DNA of 40,881 bases from Octopus bimaculoides (Eukaryota). Where the stretch lies: NCBI RefSeq assembly GCF_001194135.2, contig NC_068981.1, positions 4,147,507 through 4,188,387 on the forward strand, read 5' to 3'. Each line of letters opens with the position of its first letter. Positions within the stretch are counted from its first letter, which is position 1. The notes under the pieces are model-generated. The model was not told the origin of the DNA and searched no databases. It saw only the letters and a list, made by a program, of their open reading frames with translations. Below, piece by piece: positions 785 to 40,881 of this stretch. Made by a program: the position numbers and the translations under genes.

Positions 785-1112
785 GTAAGTGGATTTATTT
801 AGCTTTATAGCTCCCTAAAAACATTGTCATTTCCATTTCATAAAGTCACCCATATTTGTAATCCTGAGCTCCAATGACACTGGTGGTGGTGGTATTGGCT
901 GCTGCTGCTGTTTTTGTGTTTGCAAATGAAAATGTATTTCTTGGGCGTGAAGAATTAGCTAACAACACCCATGAACATTTATCAGAAGAGTTTTATTACT
1001 GTACAGACTATTAACTGTGTTGGGTTTTTTACATATAAATTTCCCCTGACTAGCTTCCTTGCTGGTGACACATAAAAAGCACCATCTAAACGTGATCGAT
1101 GCCAGGTCCACA

Positions 1113-1412
1113 TGGGTTTTCATTCCTAAGGTATTTTTTGGCAGTGGCGGTGGAAGCCAGGTCACTGCCCGGCATCAAACTCAGAATCTTGGGATCAGCA
1201 GCCCACGCTCTTGACCCTAAGATTCCGAGTTCGATTCCAGGCAGTGATCTGAATAATAATAATGATAATAACATTGAAAAATACTTTAGGAATGAGAACC
1301 CAGGTTCAAAATTTCCCCAAGACACCTGAAGAAGGCTGGAGGGTATATCAGCCGAAACGTGTTAACAACAAACAAGATTAGGACAAATATCCGTCAAATG
1401 TAAATGATGTAC
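1113..1412. mobile_element. Head-to-head tRNA/hammerhead element, locus A (left arm partial)
   Basis: Arms ~1113-1193 and ~1216-1302 are reverse-complementary. The + arm continues into GACAC-CTGAAGA-A-GGCTG...CAGCC-GAAA-CGTGTT (1321-1363) and ends at AATGATGTAC 1412. Confidence 0.8.
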
Positions 1413-5126: not shown

Positions 5127-5181
5127 GTTTGTCATCTCTTTTTATTTTTATTTCTATAAGATACAGGAACCAACAATAGTA

Positions 5182-5355
5182 CAGTTCTATATTTAAGAAA
5201 TGAGGAATTATGTACATTATTTACATCTGACAGATATTTATCCTCATCTTGTTTGTTGTTAACACAGCGTTTTGGCTGATATACTCTCCAGCCTTCATCG
5301 GGTGTCTTGGGGAAATTTCGAACATGGGTTCTCATTCCTAAGGTATTTTTCGATG

Positions 5356-5394
<39 letters not shown>

Positions 5395-5655
5395 CCATGG
5401 GCATATAGCGTAGTGGTTAAGAGCACTGGCTACTAACCCCAAGATTCCGAGTTCAATTCCAGGCAGTGACCTGAACAACAACAGCAGCAGGAGCAACAAC
5501 AACAACAACAACATTGAAAAATACCTTAGGAACGAGAACCCAGGTTTGAAATTTCCCCAAGACACCTGATGAAGGCTGGAGGGTATATCATCCGAAACAT
5601 TGTGTTAACAACAAACAAGATGAGGACAAATATCCGTCAAATGTAAATAATGTAC
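5182..5655. mobile_element. Head-to-head tRNA/hammerhead element, locus B
   Basis: The - arm (with tail) is joined inside (ATT)n to CCCATGGGCATATAGCGTAGTGG of a full + arm. Flanked by ACCAACAATAGT (5169-5180) and ACCAGCAATAGT (5654-5665). Confidence 0.88.
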
Positions 5656-5959
5656 CAGCAATAGTGTTAGCTACCGTGACTGAGGGCCAACAATGGTACT
5701 AGCTGCAAAGGTTAAGAATCTGCAGAGATGGTAGCTGAAGAGATTAAGGGTCAATAGTTGTACTAGCTGCAGAAATTAATTAGGAAATTATAAAGTAATT
5801 AAAGAAAAGTTGCAAGAGTCTCCATACAATATGAAGCTGTTGAGAGTATCAGAGTACATTGGGTTAATAATATGTTTAATGAATCCAATTGTTAAACTGC
5901 TAATTAAAGTAATTATGAAGTAATACCTTCTGTTGTTAACCACTGAACCTTGAAGTTGA

Positions 5960-6842: not shown

Positions 6843-7225
6843 TGTGTGGTAAGTAGCTTGCTTACCAACCACATGGTTCCGGGTTCAGTCCCACTGTGTG
6901 GCACCTTGGGCAAGTGTCTTCTACTATAGCCTCAGGCCGACCAAAGCCTTGTGAGTGGATTTGGTAGACAGAAACTGAAAGAAGCCCATCGTATATATAT
7001 ATATATCTATGCGTGTGTGTTTGTGTGTCTGTGTTTGTCCCCCCAACATTACTTGACAACCGATGTCGGTGTGTTTACATCCCCGTAACTTAGCGGTTTG
7101 GCAAAAGAGACCGATAGAATAAGTACTAGGCTTACAAAGAATAAGTCCTGGGGTCGATTTGATTCGACTAAAGGCGGTGCTCCAGCATGGCTGCAGTCAA
7201 ATGACTGAAACAAGTAAAAGAGTAA
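6843..7225 (+). mobile_element. tRNA-derived SINE with CORE-like segment (family 1)
   Basis: A-box-like TGTGTGGTAAG, B-box-like GGTTCAGTCCC, CACCTTGGGCAAGTGTC resembling the CORE domain, internal (TA)/(TG)n, tail GAAACAAGTAAAAGA; many copies in the window. Confidence 0.85.
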
Positions 7226-7768
7226 GGTATTATGTGGTATCTAGACAAGATTCCACTCAAGCACACACACATACACACACAAAATGCACACACACATACA
7301 CACACAAAATGCACACACATGTATACATACGACAGGCTTCGGTTGGCCCAGGATCAGCCCATGGTGTCATGCAGTGTGACTGAATCTGAACCCGCACAGT
7401 TGAGAAACAAGCTTCTTAACCACACAGCCACGTCTGTGCCTATTAAGAATAAATGAAAGTTGTCTTGATATAAAACATGACAACCCTTCTAATGCTGGTG
7501 CTACAATAAAACGCACTCAATACATTCTATAAAGTGATTGCTGCTGGGAAGAGCATCAGACCATAGAGATCTCGAGCGAAATGTGGTCTCCACCTCATCG
7601 AAGACAGACTGTCATGGAAAAGTAGACCCAAGAAAGTAAATTAACGATTTATTGGTTGGTTTTTAAAGGAAATAATTAAATAAATGATTTAATCATTGAC
7701 CTTTTGTTATGATATGTTTTGTTTGTGTTTGTACAATAACTCCTCCCCTCTTTTTTCTTTTTGTCCAG

Positions 7769-9387: not shown

Positions 9388-11243
9388 AAAATCATCATCA
9401 TTGTTTAACGTACATTTTCCATGCTGCATGGGTTGGATGGTTTGTTTGAGATCTGGAGAGCCAGCGGCTGCACCAAGCTCCAATCTGATCTGGCAATGTT
9501 TCTACAGCTGGATGCCTTTCCTAATGCCAACCACTCCAAGACTGTATTGAGTGCTCTTTACGTGCCACCGGTATAGGAGCCTGTCAGGCAGATCTGGCAT
9601 TGACCACGTCCAGATGGTTCTTTTTACATGCCACTGGCATGGGTGTCAGTCAGGGGACATTGGCATCGACCACATTTGGATGATGCCTTTTACGTGCCAC
9701 TGGAATGGGAGCCAGTCAATGGGAACTGGCCACAGCTACAATTTTAGTTTTACTTGACTCAACAGGTCTTCTCAAGCATATCATATTGCCCGATGCATCA
9801 AGGGTACTCTTAAATGGGCCAGACATACAACACCAGCATCGGCCATGACTGTGATCTCACTTTAGTTGCCAGGTCTTCTCAATCACAGCATATCTCCAAA
9901 GATCTCGGTCTCTTGTCAATGCCTCCGTGAGGCCCAACGTTTGAAGGTCATGCTTCACCACCTCATCCCATGTCTTCCTAGGTTTACCTCTTCCACAGTT
10001 AGGGTGTGGCACTTTCTCACACAGCTATCCTCATCCATTCTCGCCACATGACCATACCGGTGCAGTTGTCTCTCTTGCACACCACATCTGATGCTTCTTA
10101 TGCCCAACTTTTCTCTCAGGGCACTTACACTGTCGTGTATGCACACTGACATTACACATCCAGCAGATCATACAAGTTTCATTTCTTTCAAACCTACACA
10201 TGTCCTCAGCAGTCATGACCCATGTTTCACTGCCATGTAGCATGACAGTTCACACACATGCCGCATACAGTCTACCTTCCATCCTGAGTGAGAGGCTCTT
10301 AGTTGCCAGCAGAAGTAGGAGCTCCCTGAACTTTGACCAAGTTATTCTTATTCTAGTCGCTACTCTCTCAGAGCAACCACCCCCATTACAGACCTGGTCG
10401 CCTAGGTAGCAGAAGATATTAACTACTTCTAGTTTCTCCCCTTGGCATGTGATAGAATCTGTTTTCTGTACATCTTCAGTGTTTATTGCCCCTGTGCATC
10501 TGCTATGCACAATTGCTCCACCTTTTATGTGTCCATAGCTTACACCAGGTATATCGTATGGAGTTTCTCCCTATGCCTTTTCTACAGATTGAGCAAGGCC
10601 ATCTACCTGAAGGGGTTTGTCATTTGACAACCTTCTTACTTACTAAGACTTTGATTTTTGCTAGGTTAACCCTAAGGCCCTTCAATTCTAGACCTTGCTT
10701 CCACACCCTAAACTTCATCTTTAGTTCTGGCAGTGACTTGGCTATTAGAGTAAGGTTCAGCATAGGGGAGCTCCCAGGGGCAGCCTGTCTTGAATTCCTC
10801 TGTTATTGCCTGGAGGACTATGATGAACAAGAAGGGGCTGAGGACTGATCCTTGGTAAACCCCTACTTCTGCCTGGAATTCTTCACTATACTCGTTGCCA
10901 ACCCTCACCTTACTGACAGCATACAGGGCTTGTGCAGCTCTTACCAACCACTCATCTATCCCCAGTTTCTGCATTGACCACCTGATAAGGGATCGGAAGA
11001 CCCTGTCAAAGGCTTTCTCCAAGTCAACAAAAGCCAAGTACAGAGGTTTATCTTTGGCTAGATATTTCTCCTGCAGTTGCCTTACCAGAAATATGGCATC
11101 AGTGGTGCTTCTGCCTGGCACAAAACCAAACTGCATCTCATCTAAGCTAACTCTCTCCCTAATTAGTGGTGCTATGACCCCCTCTGTAACTTTCATCACT
11201 TGATCCAATAATTTGATACCCCTGTAGTTATTTCTATCCAGAT
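9388..11243 (-). mobile_element. 5'-truncated, inactive RTE-clade LINE in the RNF123 intron between exons 7 and 8
   Basis: RT motifs NYRGIKLL...QFGFVPGRSTTDAIF...AFVDLEKAFD...GVYQGSVLSP (ORF 10708..11268 -). A 2-nt deletion in the YADD codons (TATGCTGAACCTT) shifts the frame. The C-terminal ...LHGSETW...YGHVARM fragments, 3' UTR and (GAT)n tail follow. ATAGATAGATAGAT flanks both ends. Confidence 0.92.
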
Positions 11244-11296
11244 ATAGATAGATAGATGTTGTGTTCATGTTTTTAATTGAACTCCTTTATTTTCAG

Positions 11297-11382: not shown

Positions 11383-11434
11383 GTAAGAAATTTGTTCTCT
11401 TTCTGATTCAGTGTTTTAAATGTTTTTAACAAAT

Positions 11435-11600
11435 TTACATTATTTACATTTGATGGATATTTGTCCTCGTCTTGTTTGTTATTAACATGTTTCGACTGAT
11501 ATACCCTCCAGCTGTCCACAGGTGTTTTGGGCATATGGTGTAGTGGTTAAGAGCGCAGGCTACTAACCCCTAGATTCCGAGTTCGATTCCAGGCAGTGAT

Positions 11601-11634
<34 letters not shown>

Positions 11635-11804
11635 TCAAAAAATACCTTAGAAATGAGAACCCAGGTTCAAACTTTCCCCAAGACACCTGATGAAGGCTTG
11701 GAGGGTATATCAGCTGAAATGTGTTAACAACAAACAAGATGAGGACAAATATCCGTCAAATGTAAATAATGTAAATAATTCCTCATCTCTTAAATATAGA
11801 ACTG
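11435..11804. mobile_element. Head-to-head tRNA/hammerhead element, locus C
   Basis: A short - arm is joined via GGG to a full + arm ending TATAGAACTG. Perfect 14-bp duplication TGTTTTTAACAAAT at 11421-11434 and 11803-11816. Confidence 0.9.
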
Positions 11805-12429
11805 TTTTTAACAAATGTTTTAATGATTTGCTTTTGAATGAATTTTATAATCTTGATATATTTTAAAAACCTGCAACACTTTAGCCTCCAACATGTTGCA
11901 CCAGTCGACTGGTTGTATCATGTTTCTGCTTCAATAATATGAGTTAAAAGCTAAAGATTTAAAGATACATCCCCGCCCAACGCTTCTTCTTCATTATATT
12001 CACCCTGATCACTTGTTCCCCATTTTACCCCCCACCATCTCTCTCTTCCATATGTTCTTGCAAACTCTACTCACCCACATTCCCTGCTCTTCTATCCCTA
12101 TTCCTATTCACCTTGTACTTTGAGGCTCTACCCTGACACCTCATCACTACTATTTATATCTCTTTCCAGCTCTACCCTGGTCAGTCCCGCATCATCACTC
12201 CCACCATCTCTTCTATATAAGATGACTAACCATGTAACTCCTCAACACGAAGAAGCCTGTACCCTTCTATCCCCTTCTCTCATACTTTAACTCCTGATTC
12301 CCTAACACAATTCCCACTCCCCTCTCTGCTGTAACCCCACCCAATTGAAGTGGATCTTAGTCTCACAAGCTGCATGGCTACTTTGCTAGTGCTAATACCA
12401 TGAAGGAAAGTACTGTAAAGTGGTTGACA

Positions 12430-19435: not shown

Positions 19436-19467
19436 TAATAATAATAATAATATCCAGCTGAATTAAT

Positions 19468-19875
19468 TACTCTTTTACTTGTTTCAGTCATTTGACTGTG
19501 TCCATGCTGGAGCACCACTTTTTTAGTCAAGCAAATCAACCCCAGGACTTATTTTTTGTATGACTAGTACTTATTCTATCAGTCTCTTTTGCTGAACCGC
19601 TAAGTTATGGGGACATAAACACACCAGCATCGGTTGTCAAGCAATGTTGGGGGGGGACAAACACAGACACACAACATATACACACACATACATATATATA
19701 TATACATATATACGACAAGCTTCTTTCAGTTTCCGTCTACCAAATCCACTCACAAGGCTTTGGTCAGCCCGAGGCTATAGTAGAAGACACTTGCCCAAGG
19801 TGCCATGCAGTGGGACTGAACCCAGAACCATGTGGTTGGTAAGCAAGCTACTTACCACACAGCCACTCCTGTGCC
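19468..19875 (-). mobile_element. SINE family 1, full-length copy
   Basis: Reverse complement of the 6843-7225 element. Confidence 0.85.
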
Positions 19876-27287: not shown

Positions 27288-27665
27288 GGCGCAGGAGTGG
27301 CTGTGTGGTAAGTAGCTTGCTTACCAACCACATGGTTCCAGGTTCAGTCCCACTGCATGACACCTTGGGCAAGTGTCTTCTACTATAGTCTCGGGCCAAC
27401 CAAAGCCATGTGAGTGGATTTGGTAGACGGAAACTGAAAGAAGCCCGTCGTATATATGTGTGTGTGTCTGTCCCCCACCACTATAGCTTGACAACTGATG
27501 GTGGCATGTCTATGTCCCCATAATTTAGTGGTTCGGCAAAAGGGATTGATAGAATAAGTACTAGGCTTACAAAAAATAAGTTCCAGGGTTGATTTGTTCA
27601 ACTAAAAGGCAGTGCTCCAGCATGGCAGCAGTCAAATGACTGAAACAAGTAAAAGAATAAAAGAA
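27288..27665 (+). mobile_element. SINE family 1, full-length copy
   Basis: GGCGCAGGAGTGGCTGTGTGGTAAG...GAAACAAGTAAAAGAATAAAAG. Confidence 0.85.
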
Positions 27666-28132: not shown

Positions 28133-28254
28133 CCTCTAACACATGCTAGCATGGGAAAACAGACATAAATCAAAATGCTATAATACTCTAGTCAATATAT
28201 ATGGTGCCATCCAAGGTAGTGAGTTAGCAGAACTGATAGCATGGGCAAAATGCT

Positions 28255-28530
28255 TACTCTTTTACTTGTTTCAGTCATTTGACTGTGGCCATGCTGGAGC
28301 ATCGCCTTTAGTCGAGCAAATTGACCCCCAGGACTTATTCTTTGTAAGCCTAGTACTTATTCTATCGGTCTCTTTTGCTGAACCGCTAAGTTACGGGGGA
28401 CGTAAACACACCAGCATCGGTTGTCAAGCGATGTTTGGGGGACAAACACAGACACACACATACATATATATAAATGCATATATACAATGGGCTTCTTTCA
28501 GTTTCCGTCTACCAAATCCACTCACAAGGC
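28255..28530 (-). mobile_element. SINE family 1, 5'-truncated
   Basis: Tail-to-body match on the - strand. Confidence 0.8.
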
Positions 28531-29000
28531 TTGAACTTGGATCGCTGAATTCAAAATCCAGAGTGCTAAACATTACATCAAAAATTGCTAAAATATTTTC
28601 TTTAGTAGAAATATAACCAATTTATTGCACATAAACTTTGGCAACAAAATCTTATATAGACCCCCCCACACACACACACACACACACCAAAGGCTTTGTG
28701 AGAATCACTGTGCTAAAGTGAAAAAGAGGGATCAAATGATCCAGTTCTCCCTCTCTGGATGCCTAACCTCATCACTTCCAATCTACTTCAGCTTCTTCAA
28801 TGGTAAAACAGGTATTGGCACAGCTTGTTGCTTTCATTGACGAAAGTGTGTTTGTGTGGCAGGTATCGAGAGACAATGGACATTCCACTTCTCCCATAAA
28901 TATGTCTTGCATTGTCATCATTGTTCCTTAGATAAAAGATGCTAGGCATTAATAAACACCAATTTGAAACAGAAAACAGCAGCAGATCCACTGAAGATAT

Positions 29001-29460: not shown

Positions 29461-29707
29461 CATGAAATATTAATGGAAATATAATAAAAGGATTAAAGCA
29501 GTATCTATTGGTAGCAGAACCAAGATCAAAATGCTATCTGTTGCTCCTTTACCATCTCAAATTATTGCTTTTAATATTTTACATATTATATAATAATATA
29601 AATATATTTCATTTATATTATAAATATATTTATAATATTTTATGTTAAAATCTTTGCAATTATTTATAAATGTTAAAATTTATTTATAATTCAACCAGGA
29701 GTTAATC

Positions 29708-30048
29708 CAGTTCTATATTTAAGAGATGAGGAATTATTTACATTATTTACATTTGATGGATATTTGTCCTCATCTTCTTTGTTGTTAACACGTTTCAGCT
29801 GAGGCACTCTTCAGCGTTCATCAGGTGTCTTGGGGAAATTTCGAACCTAGGTTCTCATTCCTAAGGCCTTTTTTGATGTTATTATTAATTATTATTATTC
29901 AGGTCACTGCCTGGAATCGAACTCGGAATTTTGGGGTTAGTATCCAGTGCTCTTATACCATATGCCTGTGGGCCCATGGGCATATGGCGTAGTGGTTAAG
30001 AACGCAGGCTATTAACCCCAAGATTTTGAGTTTGATTCCAAGCAGTGA

Positions 30049-30080
<32 letters not shown>

Positions 30081-30223
30081 TCAAAAAATACCTTAGGAAT
30101 GAGAACACAGGTTTGAAATTTCCCAAAGACACCAGATGAAGGCTGAAGGGTATATCAGCCGAAATAATTGGTCTATCAACAAACAAGATGAGGACAAATA
30201 TCCGTCAAATGTAAATAAAGTAC
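29708..30223. mobile_element. Head-to-head tRNA/hammerhead element, locus D (both arms near full length, spacer-less centre GGG|CCC 29970-29975)
   Basis: 265-nt and 251-nt reverse-complementary arms, flanked by CAGGAGTTAAT (29696-29706) and CAGGAATTAAT (30223-30233). Confidence 0.9.
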
Positions 30224-32129
30224 AGGAATTAATAATATCAATTTTCGTATTGAAAGAAAATTTAAAACTTTATCAATTTAATATGATCTGGACTCTATAA
30301 GAAGAAATATCTCAAGAAATGTCAAAACTATGAGAAGAAAAAAAAAAACAAAGCTTCCAGAATTGTCTGAATTAGATCTCGGTTTTGAATTTCATAAATA
30401 AAATCACTTTACTTCATTCTGGGCAAATAAACTCCTGATTTATGGAACTCCTTTTATAGACATTTTCATACGTAAATTGCAATTCATTCCTCTTCAATAA
30501 AAACAGAGTTTTATCTTTAAATATTATATTTAAGAATAAAAATAGGAACAGCTTTCAAAAGTTGCCTTTGTATGCATTTTATTTTCCATATTTTATTAAT
30601 TAAATATTTGTAAGTAAAGTTTCCTTTAAAATTATTTCTTGTTCTAAAATAGCCATAGAATTTTTTAATATAACAAACTTTATATTTTCTAGACAAAGAG
30701 TTGGAACTAAATTTAATGAAATATTAGGAGAAAAAAAATTATAAATTCCGAAATATGAATAAGAATACTATTTCTGTTTAATATCTATTTAACATTTACT
30801 TAACATACGTTAAACAATCTGTTTAACACCTTGTTAATATCTGTTTTACATCTGTTTAACATGGTGTCAAGTTTATAGAAAGTAATTTGTTAATGAATCA
30901 AATTTAGTGCGAAATCCACAACTATTTCTAAGAAATATTTCTATTTTCTGGCTTATCAAAAATCTTAAACATATTTTATTGAGTAATAAAATCTTAAAAA
31001 GAATTGATCAGACACAAAGGTCAATAAAATTGAAATAATTTCTTTTTTATAAATGTCTTCCAGCAAAATTTCTGTAACACACACACACACACATCCCCCA
31101 CACATACAATTTGGAATGTTCTCTTTATTCTACCAGTTCTGCATTCTTCAGTAAACTTTTATACACCCACACACACAAAAACAAACAAACAAAAACCCAG
31201 TACCAATTTGGTGAATTATTTACAAAAAATAAAACAATTTTTCTTTCTTGTAGCAGTGCAAAATATTTTGTTTTGTAATGAAAACAAAATATGCTAATTA
31301 TTCTTGTAAAAATTTTTTCTTTAAATGCTCATATTTTGAAAATAAAACAAACTATTTTGCAGACAAAACATCGCAGAAAAAGAAATGCGAGATGTTCTTA
31401 TTAAAGGCTTAAAGAAAAGCTTCTGGCATTATAATTTCACAGTAGTATTTTAGCATTGAAGATTTTTACCATATTTTTTTTAAAATACAGTTCCGTCATT
31501 ATTGTTTATAATATACAAGTGTAGAGATTATTACAAAATAGGTAAGAGAAAGAATTCTATCTCACTGATACCAACTTTGTTAATTATGAATCATGATCAC
31601 AGCAGCTAAGTTATGGAAGATAATTAAGAGAAAGAGATTTCTCGAGTTGACATCTCATGTCTTTGAGTCATTGCTTTTGAATTGGCGCTGATATATTTGA
31701 AATAACTTGTGTGTAATATCCCTTATACCAAAAACCGAATATTCTGAAAGATAATAAGAACATTTTTGTTATTTGTGACAAAAGCAGTATTAGTTCAAAC
31801 TAGCAATCTGCGTATCATACTTAAAATAGACACATCATTGAAAGTCAGCTAAACTGTGCTGTACATCTTGAGAAATCTGTCAGCTATCAGATACAATAAG
31901 GCATCTAGCTGCTGCCCCCTCTAACAGCTCCCTTATTCCTCTGCCCAGCATCAGTAATTTCATTAACCAACCCCGGAAAGGAAGACGGGTAAAGTTGACT
32001 TCAGTGCAATTTGAACAAAGACTGTAGGGAATCAGAATAAGCAAATGCTGTGAGATGCCACAGGGATAACCTACAAAGGTCATGGGGTCACCCCATGCAC
32101 CCTCCTTGACCAACTTATAAAACATCATA

Positions 32130-32730: not shown

Positions 32731-32824
32731 ATTATTATTATTATTCAGGTCACTGCCTGGAATTGAACTCGGAATCTTGGGGTTAGTAGCCCGCATTCTT
32801 AACCACTACACCATATGCCCATGG
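32731..32824 (-). mobile_element. Solo tRNA-like head of the hammerhead element, locus E
   Basis: Reverse complement reads CCATGGGCATATGGTGTAGTGGTTAAGAATGCGGGCTACTAACCCCAAGATTCCGAGTTCAATTCCAGGCAGTGACCTG(AAT)n; no 3' part. Confidence 0.85.
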
Positions 32825-33676
32825 ACATTATAAATAAAAATAGATACAGTGTTCTTAAGCATAAAATGTTATTTTCACAAATATTATTTTCGGCAAAAAT
32901 AAACCAACACAATCAATATCAAAACATTTTTTAATAAAAATTAGTCAATTTATAAAGAATTGTTAGGTTTTTAGTTAAATGCACTGAGAAAAGAAAAGCT
33001 ATAATTACCATATTTGGTGGCATATAAGATACAGTTTTCCTCCCTCAAAACAACATACCCCTGGGTTCTATATGTGGAATTAGGTCTATATAACATGCTT
33101 TCGAAAGGGACTAAAAAAAGGCTCCTTCCCAAGCTGTAGATTCATAGGGTTGGTTTCTTGGATTCTGTAGTGTATATATTCCCTCCCTGGGCCGTGGTCT
33201 GTCACAAGATTACTCACTTTTGCCAGCTGAGTGGGCTGGAGCAATGTGAAAGGAAGTGTTTTGCTCAAGAACACAACACACTGCGCAGGCCAGGAATCGA
33301 AACCACAGTCCTATGATCATAAGTGCAACACCTTAACCAAAAAGCCATGCACCTCCACATTAAATACTTGAACTTTTTTCTTCTTTCAATGGATTCAGGT
33401 GTAGAGCTGCAGCCATGTTGGAGCAGTACTTCAATGCACCAAAAATGCACCCTGAATATATGCTACTGAAATTAGGGAGCATCTGAGTTTCAGCTAGAGT
33501 ACAAAGCAACAAAGTACAAAGCAACAGAATAGCAGCCAACATTTTTTGTACCATAATTTGAAATGATAATAATTAGTTAAGGTATTAATTAAGAGAGAGG
33601 TTTAACAGCAAGATGGGAAGTTAAACATGAAGAAGATCGAAGCAGGGGAAAAGAAAAACAAATGCCTAATGATGAA

Positions 33677-33830
33677 AGTGACTGTGTGGTAAGAAACTTG
33701 CTTCCCAACCAGATGGTTTGAGGTTCAGTGCCACTACGTGGCACCATGGGCAAGTGTCTTCTACTATAGCCTTGGGCCGTCCAAAGCACTGTGAGTGGAT
33801 TTAGTAGACAGAAACTGGAAGAAGCCTGTC

Positions 33831-33874
<44 letters not shown>

Positions 33875-34099
33875 GTATACATATATATACACGTGTGTTT
33901 GTGTGTGTGCGTCCGTTTGTTCCCCACCATCGGTTGACAACTGATGTTGGTGTGTTTATATCCCTGTAACTTAGCAGTTCAGCAAAAGAGACCGATAGAA
34001 CAAGTACTAGGCTTACAATGAATAAGTCCTGGGGGTCGATTTGTTTGACTAAAGGTGGTGCTCCAGCATGGCTGCAGTCAAGTGACTGAAATGAGTAAA
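33677..34099 (+). mobile_element. SINE family 1, full-length copy with long (TA)n
   Basis: Head, CORE-like segment and tail all match. Confidence 0.85.
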
Positions 34100-34329
34100 C
34101 GACCAAGTGTTAGTAATGAGGAAATGTGAGAAGAGAAATCAAGATGTCAATGGGAGTAAGTTCGTTTGGAAGAAACTGACGAGTTGGCATTAAACAGAAG
34201 TTGATGAGGTAAAAGAGTGAGGGTGAGAGGAGAAGAGGAGAGAGTCGGGGTGGGGTGAGTTGGGAGGGGGAGGAGACATGTACAGTGACTGTGGAAGTGA
34301 GAAGCAGGGAGAGGAAACCGAAACAATTG

Positions 34330-35060: not shown

Positions 35061-36103
35061 TTTCTATCAGTGACAGCATCACATTCTGCTCTTCTTCTGA
35101 AAGACAGATTGAAATATTCTGCCCATTAACAGTTTGTATATTGCAAAAAGGAAATAGAAACACATTCACACACAAATAAATATATAAACATATATAAATA
35201 AATAAATAAATGTGTGTGTGTGTGTGTTCTTGTTTCAGTCATTAGACAGGCCATGCTGGGGCACCGCTTTGGATAAGTGAGATGCTTACAGCACCTACGT
35301 TTCCCAAGCAGTCACCCATCCAAGTACTATCTAAGCTTCACGTTGCTTACCTTCAGTGATCAGATGAGAACTGGTGCATTCTATCTATACCCAGGGTGCA
35401 TCAGTTTTTTGAGGACATCTCTTTCAAGAGCTCTAATGTTCTTCTGGCTTACTTTTTTTTTTTTTACCTTACTTTTCTGATAAATAATATCAGGTATCAG
35501 GTTGACTCAGCCAATGAAAGGGCTGTAATTGCTGTTTTGAGAGCACAGCATGATAACACAGAGATTGACCACTTATTGAAAGTTGTCCAATCTTTCATTA
35601 GCAAAGTTCAAAAGGAGTTGGAAGCTGCCGACAGGGATCTAAAATGAGCGGCTAAATGCAAAATGCATGCATAGGGTCCTAATACAGTCAGAACACTTAA
35701 CTTTGTACAAAATGTCCAAGAAATAATTGATAAAACTCCAGAAAGTCAATCACAGCTATTGCAAACGACCTCAAGTTTTCAGAATGGACCATCAGAAGAG
35801 TTGTGTATGAAGACATCCAGTTCGGTTGCATGTGATGTGGAGGGGTCAGTTCAAGTGAGATGAGGCAAGAGAGAATCATTGAATCTGGGCAAAATGCAGG
35901 TTAAAGAAGTCAAAACACCAACAGATTGAAATGCTTTGGTTTTTCTCCGATGAGAGAAATTTCAATCAGGATTAAAAGGCAAACTGAGGGAACAACAGAT
36001 GGTCATGCAAAGACCAAGATAAGGTTTCAAAGGTCATGCATACTAAGCCCCTAGCAACTGTGAAGGTTCTATGGTTCTGGGAGTTGTCAACAATACAGGA
36101 GAT

Positions 36104-36512: not shown

Positions 36513-37101
36513 AATACGTGAGATGTGCCTTTTCACCCTTTTTTTTTTACTGGGCTTAAGAGTCAATGCTGCTGTCTACACAGAGGTGTTGGAGAAAGTT
36601 GTGAGACCCTGGATAGACAGGGTACACAATCGAAGACCCTATGTCTCCCAACATGATTCTTCACTGTCTCATAAGGCCAGGCCAACCTAAGTGTGCTGAC
36701 AAGCCAATCTCCATAATTATGTTCGTCCAGACACAGGAACTCCTAAGCTCACCAGACCTCAATCCACTGGACTATTATGTATGGGGCATAGTTGAGAGAG
36801 AGAGAGAGGTCAATTAAGTGTATATATGTGGCAGCGTGGTTAAGAAGTTTGCCTTCTAACCTTATGGCTTTGAGTTCAGTCACACTGCATGGCAATTTGG
36901 GTGTTTTCCACTACATCCCTGAGTTCATTAAAGTGTTGTGAGTGGGTTTCTTAGGTGGAAACTGAAAGACATCCATCAATAGCTGTGAAATGAATGTCAC
37001 CATCTCACAAGCAGAGTCATTCTTTACCTATTTTCTGCAAAAACATGTTTGGTAATGGTGAAATATCACAGATGAGGGTTGGTAATAGGAAGGGCATCTG
37101 A

Positions 37102-37495
37102 GTATTTACATTATTTACATTTGGCAGATATTTGTCCTCATCTTGTTTGTTGTTAACACAACGTTTCGGCTGGAATTGAACTTGATCTTGGGGTTAGTAG
37201 CNNNNNNNNNNAACCACTACGCCATATGCCTGTGGGCATAGTGGTTAAGAGCGCGGGCTACTAACCCCAAGATTCCGAGTTCAATTCTTGGCAGTGACCT
37301 GAATAATAAGAATAATAATAATATCGAAAAATACCTTAGGATTGAGAATCCAGGATCGAAATTTCCCCAAGACACCTGATGAAGGCTGGAGGGTATATTA
37401 GCTGAAACGTTGTGTTAACAACAAACAAGATGAGGACAAATATCCATCAAATGTAAATAATGTACATAATTCCTCATCTCTTAAATATAGAACTG
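37102..37495. mobile_element. Head-to-head tRNA/hammerhead element, locus F, inserted into an older RTE-tail repeat
   Basis: Internally deleted - arm plus near-full + arm. GCATCTGA duplicated at 37094-37101 and 37497-37504; the host repeat resumes after it. Confidence 0.88.
37371..37416 (+). ncRNA. Minimal type I hammerhead ribozyme motif (most intact copy; predicted GUU cleavage after 37411)
   Basis: Stem I GACAC/GTGTT; CTGATGA 37376-37382; extra A; stem II GGCTG/TAGCT (two G-U pairs); GAAA 37404-37407; loop-less palindromic ACGT helix III. Structure inferred by eye, activity untested. Confidence 0.7.
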
Positions 37496-37614
37496 AGCAT
37501 CTGATTGTACAAAAATCTGCCTCAATAAATTCTGTCCGACCCTAGCAAGCATGGAAAAGTGAATGCTAAAATGATGATGTCAATGATGATGTTACCAAAG
37601 TTTAAAGAGCTTAC

Positions 37615-39722: not shown

Positions 39723-40100
39723 TCAAATAAGCAAATACAATCATTCATCAACAGGTGCTTGCGTAGTATACTTAAAATCAGATGGCCCGAACACGTAAGC
39801 AATATGGAGCTATGGCAAAGAACAAATCAAGTTTCGATTAGGGAGCAAATATTTAAGAAAAAGTGGAAGTTGATTGGTATCACAATTGGAAAAGACACAC
39901 CAAATGTAGCAAAAAGTGCTTTACAGTGGAATCCGGATGGATATAGAAAGAGGGGTAGGCCTAAGAATTCGTGGCGTAGATCAACACAAAAGGAACTAGA
40001 GAAAGGGGGACATTCATGGCAGAGTATAAGTACAGAAGCGAAAAATTATGCGACATGGAAGTCAATTATAAGTGGCCTATACTCTGCGTTGGAAGGTTAA
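39723..40100 (+). mobile_element. C-terminal fragment of a second RTE-clade LINE ORF
   Basis: IQSFINRCLRSILKIRWPEHVSNMELW...ALQWNPDGYRKRGRPKNSWRR, the typical RTE post-RT tail. Confidence 0.82.
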
Positions 40101-40312
40101 AGGCAAGAAAGAAAAAAAAGAAAAAAATATACTGTCACAAACTGTGTATATATATTATGACCATGTACACATACAAACTGTATCGTACATGTTATCAATA
40201 TGTACACCTAAAGCACATAATTTTAACATTAATACTTTTACTGGTGATATCATGTTGGTCCTGGATATGTAAAGACGTCACTGCACTCTTTGTTCTTCAT
40301 ATGCATAACATA

Positions 40313-40881
40313 CAGGGGTTGGACAAAATAATGGAAACGACTAGCATCATAGCATCATAATTTTGAAATATCTATAAAACCATCAAAAGCTTGTTTATTT
40401 TTATGTTTTTTGATTTATTATTAGTGTTGCTTAATATGTTTTGCTAAAATTGCTGTTTCTTTCCAGATATCATAAGAAAAGGGTAATTAAAATTCATTAA
40501 AATGACAGATCTATTGGACTTTCAAAGAGGTCAAATTGTTGGTGCTTTTATGGCAGGTGCTAGCATAGTGAAAACAGCCGAAATGTTTGGTGTATCAAGA
40601 AGTACTGTCTCAAAAGTAATGACAGCCTTTGAGAAAGAGGGAAAAACCTTCTTGTCGAAACAAAACTCCAGAAGAAAACCAAAATTTTCAGATAGATAGG
40701 AGCGTCAGACTATTGTGCGAATTGTTAGAAAAGATCACAAAAGTACAGCCCCCAAAATTACTACAGAGCTTAATGACCACCTCGAGAACCCAGTTTCCAC
40801 AAAAACTGTTTGCTGGGAGCTGCACAAAGCCAGATTTCATGGGAGGGCTGTAGTCGGAAAACCACTACTTTCAAAAACAAA
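40313..40881 (+). mobile_element. Tc1-like DNA transposon 5' end (runs off window); transposase from 40502 with in-frame TAG at 40697-40699
   Basis: TA|CAGGGGTTGGACAAAATAATGGAAAC TIR. MTDLLDFQRGQIVGAFMAGAS...GVSRSTVSKV (paired-like HTH), and the same frame continues ERQTIVRIVRKDHKSTAPKIT...KPLL after the stop. Confidence 0.9.

What the first reader, a model, noticed from the sequence alone, without database searches (positions are those of the whole stretch)
29708..30223. tRNA-headed, hammerhead-bearing element that integrates as head-to-head palindromic dimers (6 loci in 41 kb)
Seen: a ~280-nt non-coding unit of CCCA(C/T)GGGCATATGGCGTAGTGGTTAAGAGCGCGGGCTACTAACCCCAAGATTCCGAGTTCGATTCC (A box TGGCGTAGTGG, B box GAGTTCGATTCC), then (AAT)n, then GACAC-CTGATGA-A-GGCTG-loop-CAGCC-GAAA-CGTT-GTGTT, then a tail ending TATAGAACTG. 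It occurs at 1113-1412, 5182-5655, 11435-11804, 29708-30223, 32731-32824 and 37102-37495; five of these are inverted head-to-head pairs. At locus D the arms meet with no spacer at GGG|CCC, and the two head variants CCCATGGGC/CCCACAGGC are the two CpG-decay products of CCCACGGGC. Established: PLEs carry minimal type I hammerheads and often have inverted terminal copies; tRNA heads define Pol III SINEs; described retrozymes are usually tandem or LTR-flanked. Inference: a SINE/retrozyme hybrid, i.e. a Pol III non-autonomous element mobilised by a PLE. I cannot confirm it is undescribed.
Basis: partly seen in the sequence, partly recalled or inferred. Interest (0 to 1): 0.9.

Follow-up and report, generated by a model that had tools for sequence, protein, structure and literature searches.

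The report
Hammerhead-tailed SINE inserted as inverted pairs
A 277-base non-coding mobile element in an octopus genome joins a tRNA-like front end to a tail copied from a hammerhead-ribozyme repeat, and it almost always lands as two copies facing each other inside one target-site duplication. That is the published signature of Penelope-type retrotransposition, so this is a clean new example of a known but poorly understood process.

Summary
A ~277-nt repeat occurs at six loci, and five of them are head-to-head inverted pairs.

New points found here:
- Each of the four pairs with intact outer ends sits inside one target-site duplication of 8-12 bp, each about 1/1000 by chance. The pair is therefore one insertion event.
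- Both arms point their 3' ends outward. One arm carries a 31-nt terminal tail and the other stops at ...AATGTA. Inner 5' ends vary and join with 0-4 nt of microhomology.
- A strict minimal type I hammerhead descriptor hits one copy (37371-37416) and the consensus, and none of 200 shuffles.
- The whole 3' module aligns colinearly to ~1.4 units of a 129-nt tandem minimal-hammerhead repeat from an unrelated animal assembly. There the repeat also follows a box A/B head and forms inverted pairs with the same two 3' end positions.

These features match published Penelope-like element (PLE) insertion hallmarks.

Not shown: Pol III transcription, since the tRNA likeness is weak, and a PLE partner.

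Closest known are the Sm-alpha/Sj-alpha SINE-like elements and animal retrozymes.

The parts
29708..29972 (-). Locus D, left arm: full-length copy (head to tail) carrying the 31-nt tail at its outer end (29708-29738)
29973..30222 (+). Locus D, right arm: full 5' end, stops at ...AAATAAAGTA (short 3' end, no tail); hammerhead core mutated (CAGATGA)
29696..29706 (.). Locus D target-site duplication, left copy CAGGAGTTAAT (right copy CAGGAATTAAT at 30223-30233)
5182..5392 (-). Locus B, left arm: 5'-truncated in the (AAT)n, carries the tail (5182-5212)
5393..5654 (+). Locus B, right arm: full 5' end (CCCATGGGC...), internal (AAC/AGC)n, short 3' end; TSD CCAACAATAGT 5170-5180 / CCAGCAATAGT 5655-5665
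11436..11524 (-). Locus C, left arm: 5'-truncated inside the hammerhead region, short 3' end; joined to the right arm through TGGG microhomology
11525..11804 (+). Locus C, right arm: near full length with tail (11774-11804); TSD TTTTTAACAAAT at 11423-11434 and 11805-11816
37103..37229 (-). Locus F, left arm: full 5' end, internal deletion (unit ~72 to ~175) and a 10-N assembly gap, short 3' end
37230..37495 (+). Locus F, right arm: 5' end truncated by ~10 nt, tail at 37465-37495; TSD GCATCTGA at 37094-37101 and 37497-37504
37371..37416 (+). The only copy in the window with a complete minimal type I hammerhead: GACAC|CUGAUGA|A|GGCUGG-loop-UUAGCU|GAAA|CG|U U^GUGUU
   Evidence: (1 hit, 0 in 200 shuffles)
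1108..1216 (-). Locus A, left arm: head from unit position ~23, microsatellite replaced by a GCC/ACC-rich stretch, cut off at unit position ~141 next to another repeat; no TSD recoverable
1217..1412 (+). Locus A, right arm: 5'-truncated at unit position ~45, short 3' end; AACC microhomology at the junction
32731..32828 (-). Locus E: solo head plus (AAT)5, no hammerhead module, no convincing TSD

Best explanation
This is a non-autonomous retroposon of an octopod genome; the family is present in Octopus bimaculoides.

Composition. A ~75-nt head with Pol III-type A and B boxes (tRNA-like, degenerate) is followed by an internal (AAT)n. Behind that lies a ~170-nt 3' module that is a more-than-unit-length (~1.4 unit) copy of a minimal type I hammerhead repeat, of the kind found in Penelope-like element (PLE) pseudo-LTRs and animal retrozymes.

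Proposed mechanism.
- The RNA is made from the internal promoter. The sense strand has no T4 terminator (shown).
- The RNA is copied into the genome by a PLE reverse transcriptase/GIY-YIG endonuclease that recognises the 3' module (inferred).
- Integration is two-ended target-primed reverse transcription. The two nicks, staggered by 8-12 bp, each prime a cDNA on an element RNA. One starts at the very 3' end (...UAUAGAACUG). The other starts ~31 nt upstream, in the loop of the 3' hairpin (...AAUGUA).
- Both cDNAs run towards the RNA 5' end and may stop early or jump. Their ends are joined with 0-4 nt of microhomology. The result is a head-to-head pair inside a single TSD.

Shown: the anatomy, the single TSDs, the two fixed 3' ends, the variable 5' ends, the hammerhead motif, and the homology to a tandem hammerhead repeat. 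Inferred: Pol III transcription, the PLE as driver, and the priming model.

The hammerhead cleavage site itself seems dispensable for mobility. A subfamily with a 3-nt deletion that removes U16.1/H17 still made at least three insertions.
For: 1. Single TSDs bracket whole pairs: B 11 bp (1 mismatch), C 12 bp, D 11 bp (1 mismatch), F 8 bp. Each is matched by 2-4 of 4000 positional nulls.
2. In all four intact pairs exactly one arm carries the 31-nt extension. Every tail-less arm, including locus A's right arm, ends at ...AATGTA, within 4 nt. Craig et al. [quoted passage not shown]
3. The strict min-HHR descriptor gives 1 hit in the window (37371-37416) and 0 in 200 shuffles. The motif has the PLE min-HHR traits listed by Cervera & de la Pena 2014: no helix III, a palindromic CG at 15.2/16.2, an extra base between A9 and G10.1, a G10.1-C11.1 pair, a 5-bp helix I and a 5-6-bp helix II.
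4. The 3' module (consensus 106-276) aligns end to end with ~1.4 units of a 129-nt tandem min-HHR repeat in ENA assembly ERZ21867824. Score 124 against a shuffle maximum of 54.
5. Helix II shows compensatory U-A to C-G change between the lineages and is 88% paired.
6. In that other genome the repeat follows a different box A/B head plus body. It forms head-to-head pairs with TSDs of 7-11 bp and the same short (unit ~88-95) and long (unit ~127-129) 3' ends.
7. A second octopod-like sample (Logan SRR118693xx) has 3 of 4 loci as inverted pairs. One of them has a TSD and a one-sided tail.
8. Another SINE family in the same window has 0 of 9 adjacent inverted pairs, against 5 of 6 here (Fisher p=0.002).
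9. The consensus sense strand lacks T4+ runs while the antisense strand has T5.
10. Octopus genomes hold PLEs.
Against: - No PLE ORF lies in the window, in L004, or within 10 kb of the related loci scanned, L011, L021 and L022 (motif regex only). No PLE sharing the module could be looked for.
- The head is not called a tRNA by ARAGORN. It barely registers with the Rfam tRNA model (18.6 bits in one copy, none in others).
- No Rfam hammerhead family matches.
- Min-HHRs have low activity in vitro.
- No direct tandem (pLTR-like) copies occur in the octopus window. The only tandem trace is the degenerate 1.4-unit module.
- Variable TSDs are also made by LINEs.
- One 21-kb stretch of Octopus vulgaris holds no copy.
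Confidence: 0.7

Rival explanations
1. An ordinary LINE-dependent SINE. The 3' module would derive from the 3' UTR of a stringent LINE (for example the RTE or CR1 elements abundant in octopus), and the inverted pairs would come from twin priming by the LINE machinery.
For: Variable-length TSDs and microhomology junctions are also typical of LINE target-primed reverse transcription. RTE-type RT fragments lie in the window. No PLE was found nearby.
Against: L1-type twin priming inverts one part of a single RNA and does not duplicate the same sequence on both arms (own knowledge). The other, presumably LINE-driven, SINE family in the window shows 0 of 9 pairs. The RTE 3' end in the window (about 40100-40130, A-rich) has no similarity to the module. 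The module carries a PLE-type min-HHR and derives from a tandem hammerhead repeat. The one-sided 31-33-nt tail is a published PLE trait.
Confidence: 0.12
2. The inverted pair is itself the heritable unit. A read-through transcript of a whole pair would be reverse-transcribed, so pairs beget pairs.
For: Nearly all loci are pairs.
Against: Every locus has a different inner junction, different arm truncations, and the tail on a different arm relative to the full-length arm. These structures are therefore made anew at each insertion. The solo copy L023 is nearly full length.
Confidence: 0.05
3. A foldback or long-TIR DNA transposon (MITE) whose arms are its terminal inverted repeats.
For: The structure is palindromic, it has TSDs, and the outer end begins CAGT... 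on one side.
Against: TSD length varies from 8 to 12 bp. The two ends are not equivalent, because 31 nt are missing from one end in every pair. Inner parts are truncated differently in each copy. Tandem direct units occur in the related family.
Confidence: 0.03
4. Two independent insertions (one copy landing in or next to another), post-insertion inverted duplication, or an assembly artefact.
For: Palindromes are prone to assembly error, and locus F holds a 10-N gap.
Against: One TSD brackets each pair. Arms differ by 12-17.5%. The same architecture recurs in three independent data sets.
Confidence: 0.03

Closest known systems
Sm-alpha / Sj-alpha SINE-like retroposons of Schistosoma (Ferbeyre et al. 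1998; Laha et al. 2000; as summarised in PMC2770079)
   Same: Short non-coding dispersed repeats with a tRNA-derived head (tRNA-Gln-like for Sm-alpha) and a type I hammerhead in the body. The architecture is the same: Pol III-type head plus ribozyme.
   Different: Sm-alpha carries the canonical Schistosoma hammerhead with loop-loop contacts, not a helix-III-less min-HHR. The obligate head-to-head pairing with a one-sided tail is not, to my knowledge, part of its description. The host phylum differs.
Metazoan non-LTR retrozymes (Cervera & de la Pena 2020, PMC7229834; Li, Clavereau & Pollet 2026 bioRxiv 10.64898/2026.07.22.740005)
   Same: Non-autonomous, hammerhead-bearing repeats proposed to be mobilised by PLEs. 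The octopus 3' module is homologous to a 129-nt tandem hammerhead unit of exactly this style.
   Different: Retrozymes are defined by tandem arrays that yield circular RNAs. The octopus element is dispersed, holds only ~1.4 degenerate units with one hammerhead, and has a box A/B head that retrozyme descriptions lack (no SINE or Pol III mention).
Penelope-like elements: pLTR min-HHRs and their complex tandem/inverted insertions (Cervera & de la Pena 2014; Craig et al. 2021)
   Same: The min-HHR anatomy, an inverted 5'-truncated copy at the 5' end, a 30-40-bp tail on one end only, and frequent 5' truncation. Cervera & de la Pena also noted 'dual min-HHRs ~100-700 bp apart on opposite strands' in S. 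mansoni.
   Different: There is no RT/GIY-YIG ORF, the element is only 277 nt, and it has a Pol III-type head in place of a PLE 5' region.
Non-autonomous Chlamys PLE derivatives such as MRC1 in Chlamydomonas (Craig et al. 2021)
   Same: Short non-coding elements that share 3' ends with PLEs and form PLE-type multicopy insertions.
   Different: They are described as producing pLTRs and often head-to-tail multicopy insertions, and as sharing 3' ends with autonomous families; no Pol III-type head is described for them.
L1 twin priming (Ostertag & Kazazian 2001; own knowledge)
   Same: Both nicked target strands prime cDNA synthesis, and junctions show microhomology.
   Different: Twin priming inverts a non-overlapping part of one RNA. 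Here both arms hold the same sequence, and one start site is fixed 31 nt inside the 3' end.

Membership tests
SINE (tRNA-derived, Pol III) | Internal Pol III promoter: A box and B box at tRNA-like spacing | tested here: met
   TGGCGTAGTGG ... GAGTTCGATTCC about 43 nt apart. The spaced pattern gives 5 hits against 0.04 expected.
SINE (tRNA-derived, Pol III) | Head recognisably derived from a tRNA (cloverleaf or covariance-model match) | tested here: inconclusive
   ARAGORN finds none, even on the consensus. Rfam tRNA gives 18.6 bits (E=0.2) for one copy only and nothing for C_R.
SINE (tRNA-derived, Pol III) | Short, non-coding, dispersed, flanked by TSDs | tested here: met
   277-nt consensus with no conserved ORF; TSDs of 8-12 bp.
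SINE (tRNA-derived, Pol III) | Transcribed by Pol III; no terminator inside the element | not testable with these tools
   Only the absence of T4+ runs in the sense consensus could be shown.
SINE (tRNA-derived, Pol III) | 3' end shared with a partner LINE, or an A-rich or simple-repeat tail | tested here: not met
   The 3' end is ...TATAGAACTG without a repeat. The microsatellite is internal. There is no similarity to the RTE 3' end in the window.
PLE-mobilised non-autonomous element | Minimal type I hammerhead of the PLE kind | tested here: met
   One intact copy plus the consensus, against 0 in shuffles. Compensatory change in helix II. The features match.
PLE-mobilised non-autonomous element | Inverted 5'-truncated copy adjacent at the 5' end | tested here: met
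   5 of 6 loci in the window; 3 of 4 in each of two other data sets.
PLE-mobilised non-autonomous element | 30-40-bp tail on one end of the insertion only | tested here: met
   A 31-nt tail on exactly one arm in B, C, D and F. About 33 nt in L011, L021 and L022.
PLE-mobilised non-autonomous element | Partial direct tandems (pLTR) | tested here: inconclusive
   There are no tandem copies in the window, but the 3' module is itself ~1.4 units of a repeat. The related family has 2-2.8 tandem units.
PLE-mobilised non-autonomous element | Sequence shared with an autonomous PLE (RT + GIY-YIG) of the same genome | not testable with these tools
   No eukaryotic DNA collection was searchable. Regex scans for GIY-YIG in the window, L004, L011, L021 and L022 found none.
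Metazoan non-LTR retrozyme | Tandem array of monomers, each with a type I hammerhead, able to give unit-length or circular RNA | tested here: not met
   The octopus copies hold one hammerhead and are not tandem. The ENA relative does meet this.
Rfam Hammerhead_1 (RF00163) and other Rfam hammerhead families | Covariance-model match | tested here: not met
   No hit at E<=10 on the window, on 37200-37500 or on the related loci. This is expected for helix-III-less variants.
TIR DNA transposon / MITE | Equivalent terminal inverted repeats and a fixed TSD length | tested here: not met
   One end lacks 31 nt; TSDs are 8, 11, 11 and 12 bp.

The most novel reading that the evidence does not exclude
These elements would represent a distinct and widespread class of SINEs whose partner is a Penelope-like element rather than a LINE. 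The class would have a Pol III-type head fused to one or more minimal-hammerhead units. It would occur in at least two distant animal lineages with unrelated heads but homologous tails. It would insert by an obligate two-ended priming that starts at two fixed positions ~31-33 nt apart in the tail. Such elements would account for many of the thousands of 'orphan' dispersed min-HHRs in animal genomes. They would also offer a compact natural reporter of the unsolved PLE integration mechanism.
Probability: 0.4. Interest if true: 0.75.

Novelty: new variant of a known kind. Interest (0 to 1): 0.6.

Why it matters
PLE integration is the least understood retrotransposition mechanism. Craig et al. 2021 call for an in vitro system to explain the tandem/inverted structures and the tail.

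A 277-nt element reproduces the full PLE signature with base-pair-resolved junctions. It shows a single TSD, two fixed 3' start points, variable 5' ends and microhomology joins. That gives testable constraints: two priming events per insertion, with one starting in a hairpin loop.

It also gives a concrete carrier for dispersed min-HHRs, which reviews describe as mostly orphan motifs in non-coding DNA. It links retrozyme-type repeats to Pol III-type heads.

It further suggests that the hammerhead cleavage site is not needed for mobility. That bears on whether hammerheads serve PLEs or merely ride on them.

In practice, such pairs are long inverted repeats. They can break assemblies, be mis-annotated as exons (see P0265), and form hairpin RNAs.

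Tried and rejected
- Word-indexed protein search with the element's open sense frame: no candidates. The exhaustive representative search later succeeded.
- 20-mer scans of metagenome contigs and genome contigs: chance hits only.
- Exact look-up of a window ORF: not on record.
- RT-fragment homology searches to gather more octopus sequence. They gave only one Octopus vulgaris locus, L004, which has no copy of the element, and an unrelated ENA locus, L005.
- Look-up of the O. bimaculoides protein P0265: the gene range was too long, so no DNA was returned.
- PLE seed from paper supplements: none held.
- Regex scans for GIY-YIG and RT motifs: LINE RTs only.
- Weak similarity of the module to 40575-40601: this lies in a Tc1/mariner transposase ORF and is coincidence.
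- Idea that a palindromic 5' end (CCCATGGG) drives head-to-head joining: dropped, because the ancestral 5' end was probably CCCACGGG, which is not a palindrome.
- Hairpin-opening (P-nucleotide-like) model: rejected, because outer ends are fixed and inner ends vary, the opposite of what it predicts.
- Within-locus against between-locus arm divergence: no difference, so it gives no evidence on whether both arms came from one template.
- Literature searches for the sequence strings and for the SRA/ENA accessions: nothing relevant.

Full report
**1. What is in the window**

The window looks like a methylated animal genome: GC 35%, CpG o/e 0.34, and N gaps. An RT fragment at 10708-11268(-) is 85% identical to a predicted protein of Octopus vulgaris. 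The open sense frame of the element itself is 84% identical to an 'uncharacterized protein' of Octopus bimaculoides. It also forms the N-terminus of an O. bimaculoides gene model. The host is therefore an octopod, and the family is present in O. bimaculoides.

Self-BLAST and alignment confirm six loci:
- A: 1108-1412
- B: 5182-5654
- C: 11436-11804
- D: 29708-30222
- E: 32731-32828
- F: 37103-37495

All except E are head-to-head inverted pairs. The majority consensus is 277 nt. It runs as follows:
- CCCACGGGC, then a head with A box TGGCGTAGTGG and B box GAGTTCGATTCC
- (AAT)n
- a module of about 170 nt containing GACAC-CUGAUGA-A-GGCUGG-loop-CAGCC-GAAA-CG-UU-GUGUU
- a 3' end of ...AAATGTAAATAATGTA + CATAATTCCTCATCTCTTAAATATAGAACTG

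**2. The pair is one insertion**

In the four pairs with intact outer ends, a single target-site duplication brackets the whole pair:
- B: CCAACAATAGT / CCAGCAATAGT
- C: TTTTTAACAAAT twice
- D: CAGGAGTTAAT / CAGGAATTAAT
- F: GCATCTGA twice

Each is reached by only 2-4 of 4000 random position pairs. Locus A is cut on its left side next to another repeat and gives no TSD.

The TSD length varies from 8 to 12 bp. This fits target-primed reverse transcription and not a cut-and-paste transposase.

**3. Anatomy of the pairs**

Both arms have their 3' ends outward.
- Exactly one arm of each pair carries the last 31 nt, the 'tail'.
- The other arm stops at ...AATGTA. This holds in four of five arms; F_L runs 4 nt further.
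- The tail may sit on the full-length arm (C, F) or on the other arm (B). In D both arms are full length.

The inner 5' ends vary and join as follows:
- D: both complete, blunt GGG|CCC
- B: one arm truncated in the (AAT)n, no microhomology
- C: one arm truncated inside the hammerhead, TGGG shared
- A: both truncated, AACC shared
- F: one arm truncated by ~10 nt, 2-3 nt shared, with an internal CAG-to-CAG deletion in the other arm

So the outer ends are fixed, the inner ends vary, and microhomology is 0-4 nt. That is what two cDNAs primed from the two sides of a staggered break would give once they are joined in the middle. It is the opposite of what opening a snap-back hairpin would give.

Arms of one locus differ as much (12-17.5%) as arms of different loci (median 15%). 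The copies are therefore old, were not homogenised, and are not assembly artefacts.

A different SINE family in the same window has about nine copies and none forms an adjacent inverted pair (Fisher p=0.002).

**4. The hammerhead**

Rfam finds no hammerhead family, even at E<=10. This is expected for variants that lack helix III.

I wrote a strict descriptor with these requirements:
- helix I of at least 4 bp
- CUGANGA
- 0-1 bulged base
- helix II of at least 4 bp
- GAAA
- a palindromic 15.2/16.2
- U16.1
- H17

It finds one site in the window, 37371-37416 in arm F_R, and none in 200 dinucleotide shuffles. The family consensus also satisfies it.

The motif shows the traits that Cervera & de la Pena (2014) list for PLE min-HHRs: no helix III, a palindromic CG, an unpaired base between A9 and G10.1, a G10.1-C11.1 pair, a short helix I and a longer helix II. 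They also report such motifs in pairs on opposite strands 100-700 bp apart. The other copies are mutated.

Two subfamilies exist.
- B and F have CGUUGUGUU and a GTACATAA tail start.
- C and D_L have CGUGUU and GTAAATAA; A_R also has CGUGUU but lacks the tail. This 3-nt loss leaves no U16.1/H17 in register.

The second subfamily made at least three separate insertions, so cleavage at this site was apparently not required for mobility (inference).

**5. Origin of the 3' module**

An exhaustive protein search with the element's open sense frame gave 62 hits. Many were short ORFs with two or three repeats of ...TPEEGRRTYRPKRCGNNNKDEDNSPK....

The loci behind them come from ENA assembly ERZ21867824, species unknown. 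They share no other repeat with the window. They hold a 129-nt unit repeated 2-2.8 times, each unit with ACAC-CUGAAGA-A-GGCCGG-loop-CGGCC-GAAA-CG-UU-GUGG.

The whole octopus module (consensus 106-276) aligns colinearly with ~1.4 units of this repeat. The score is 124 against a shuffle maximum of 54. The octopus module is thus a degenerate more-than-unit-length copy. Its 3' end falls just before the point where the next hammerhead's helix I would start.

Across 20 hammerhead copies from the three lineages:
- helix II is 88% paired
- one pair switches cleanly between U-A (15 copies) and C-G (5 copies)
- the register is unique: 77% of cells pair, against 50% or less when slid

With helix I relaxed to 3 bp, two further intact min-HHRs appear in L021. 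None appear in the control loci or in shuffles.

**6. The same architecture elsewhere**

In ERZ21867824 the hammerhead units follow a different head and a ~150-nt body. The head has A box TGGCGTAACGG and B box GGTTCAATTCT, and it is not called a tRNA by ARAGORN or Rfam.

Three of four loci are head-to-head pairs with single TSDs:
- L011: TACATTTTTTT twice
- L021: CTTAAAAACTG / CTTAAAAATTG
- L022: ATTTGTC twice

In each pair one arm ends at unit position ~88-95 and the other at ~127-129. This is the same pair of end positions, ~31-33 nt apart, as in octopus. L023 is a solo, nearly full-length copy.

Short Logan contigs from runs SRR11869384-94 share another window repeat and so look octopod-like. 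They give four distinct loci of the octopus family. Three are inverted pairs, and L009 has a TSD (ATAAATAGTA) and a one-sided tail.

**7. Interpretation**

Craig et al. (2021) describe PLE insertions as follows:
- heavily 5'-truncated
- often in partial tandem
[quoted passage not shown] Every one of these features is seen here, in an element of under 300 nt with no ORF. Octopus genomes contain PLEs.

The best reading is a non-autonomous element with a Pol III-type head that borrows PLE machinery through a hammerhead-repeat tail. The sense consensus has no T4 run, which fits Pol III read-through. The 3' end can form a 9-bp hairpin, AGAUGAGGA/UCCUCAUCU, with z=-2.5, and the short 3' end lies in its loop.

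I propose two-ended target-primed reverse transcription with one start at the RNA 3' end and one in that loop. This is inference. Pol III transcription and the PLE partner are also untested.

The internal (AAT)n and the solo head-plus-(AAT)n at locus E suggest a possible origin. A hammerhead repeat may have joined the microsatellite tail of a simpler SINE, and PLEs have a microsatellite insertion bias. This is speculation.

**8. Comparison with what is known**

- Sm-alpha and Sj-alpha of schistosomes are tRNA-derived SINE-like elements with hammerheads.
- Animal retrozymes are tandem hammerhead repeats, and they are already argued to be PLE-dependent.
- Non-autonomous PLE derivatives exist in green algae.

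In the searchable literature I did not find any of the following:
- a cephalopod element of this kind
- a description of head-to-head pairs as the default product of such a SINE
- the two conserved 3' start positions
- the recurrence of unrelated heads on homologous hammerhead tails

Repbase and Dfam could not be queried. I rate it a new variant of a known kind, of moderate to good interest to transposon and ribozyme specialists.

Noticed in passing
window 35283-35395 (-): A 5S rRNA-like sequence above the Rfam gathering score (50.7 bits) but with a poorly paired closing helix. It is probably a 5S pseudogene or the head of a 5S-derived SINE.
   Followed up: no
window 6843-7226 and about eight further copies (e.g. 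19467-19861, 27302-27660, 28253-28532, 33683-34102): An abundant ~380-nt SINE family with a tRNA-like head and an internal (TA)n/(TG)n stretch. It also occurs in Octopus vulgaris (L004 1148-1530, 84-88% identity). All copies are solo, so it served as a control.
   Followed up: partly
window 40500-40881 (+): An open frame encoding the N-terminal helix-turn-helix part of a Tc1/mariner-type transposase, running off the window end.
   Followed up: no
window 10708-11268 (-) and 39759-40100 (+): LINE fragments of RTE type. The first is an RT fragment 85% identical to an O. vulgaris predicted protein. The second is the C-terminal part, followed by an A-rich 3' end.
   Followed up: partly
protein P0265 = XP_052825882.1, 'dystrobrevin beta isoform X1 [Octopus bimaculoides]': The first ~33 residues of this 94-aa gene model (MPMGIWHSGEGWRVYQPKCCVNNKQDEDKYPSK...) are a translation of the element, with the head fused to the hammerhead part. 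This is an exonised or mis-annotated repeat copy.
   Followed up: partly
protein P0002: A 194-aa 'RNA-directed DNA polymerase, partial [Escherichia coli]' on a 586-bp contig is 77% identical to the octopus LINE RT. It looks like animal DNA contamination in a bacterial record.
   Followed up: no
L009 (Logan SRR11869385), whole 1926 bp: CpG o/e is ~0.96 here against 0.34 in the window, although the contig carries the same element family. This could reflect a different methylation regime, a transcript-derived contig, or small-sample noise.
   Followed up: no
window 37202-37211: A 10-N assembly gap sits inside the left arm of pair F. This is consistent with the difficulty of assembling long inverted repeats noted for PLE insertions.
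   Followed up: no
window 1155-1172 (arm A_L) and 5477-5515 (arm B_R): The internal microsatellite is not always (AAT)n. It is GCC/ACC-rich in A_L and (AAC)n/(AGC)n in B_R. The linker between head and hammerhead module is therefore hypervariable.
   Followed up: no
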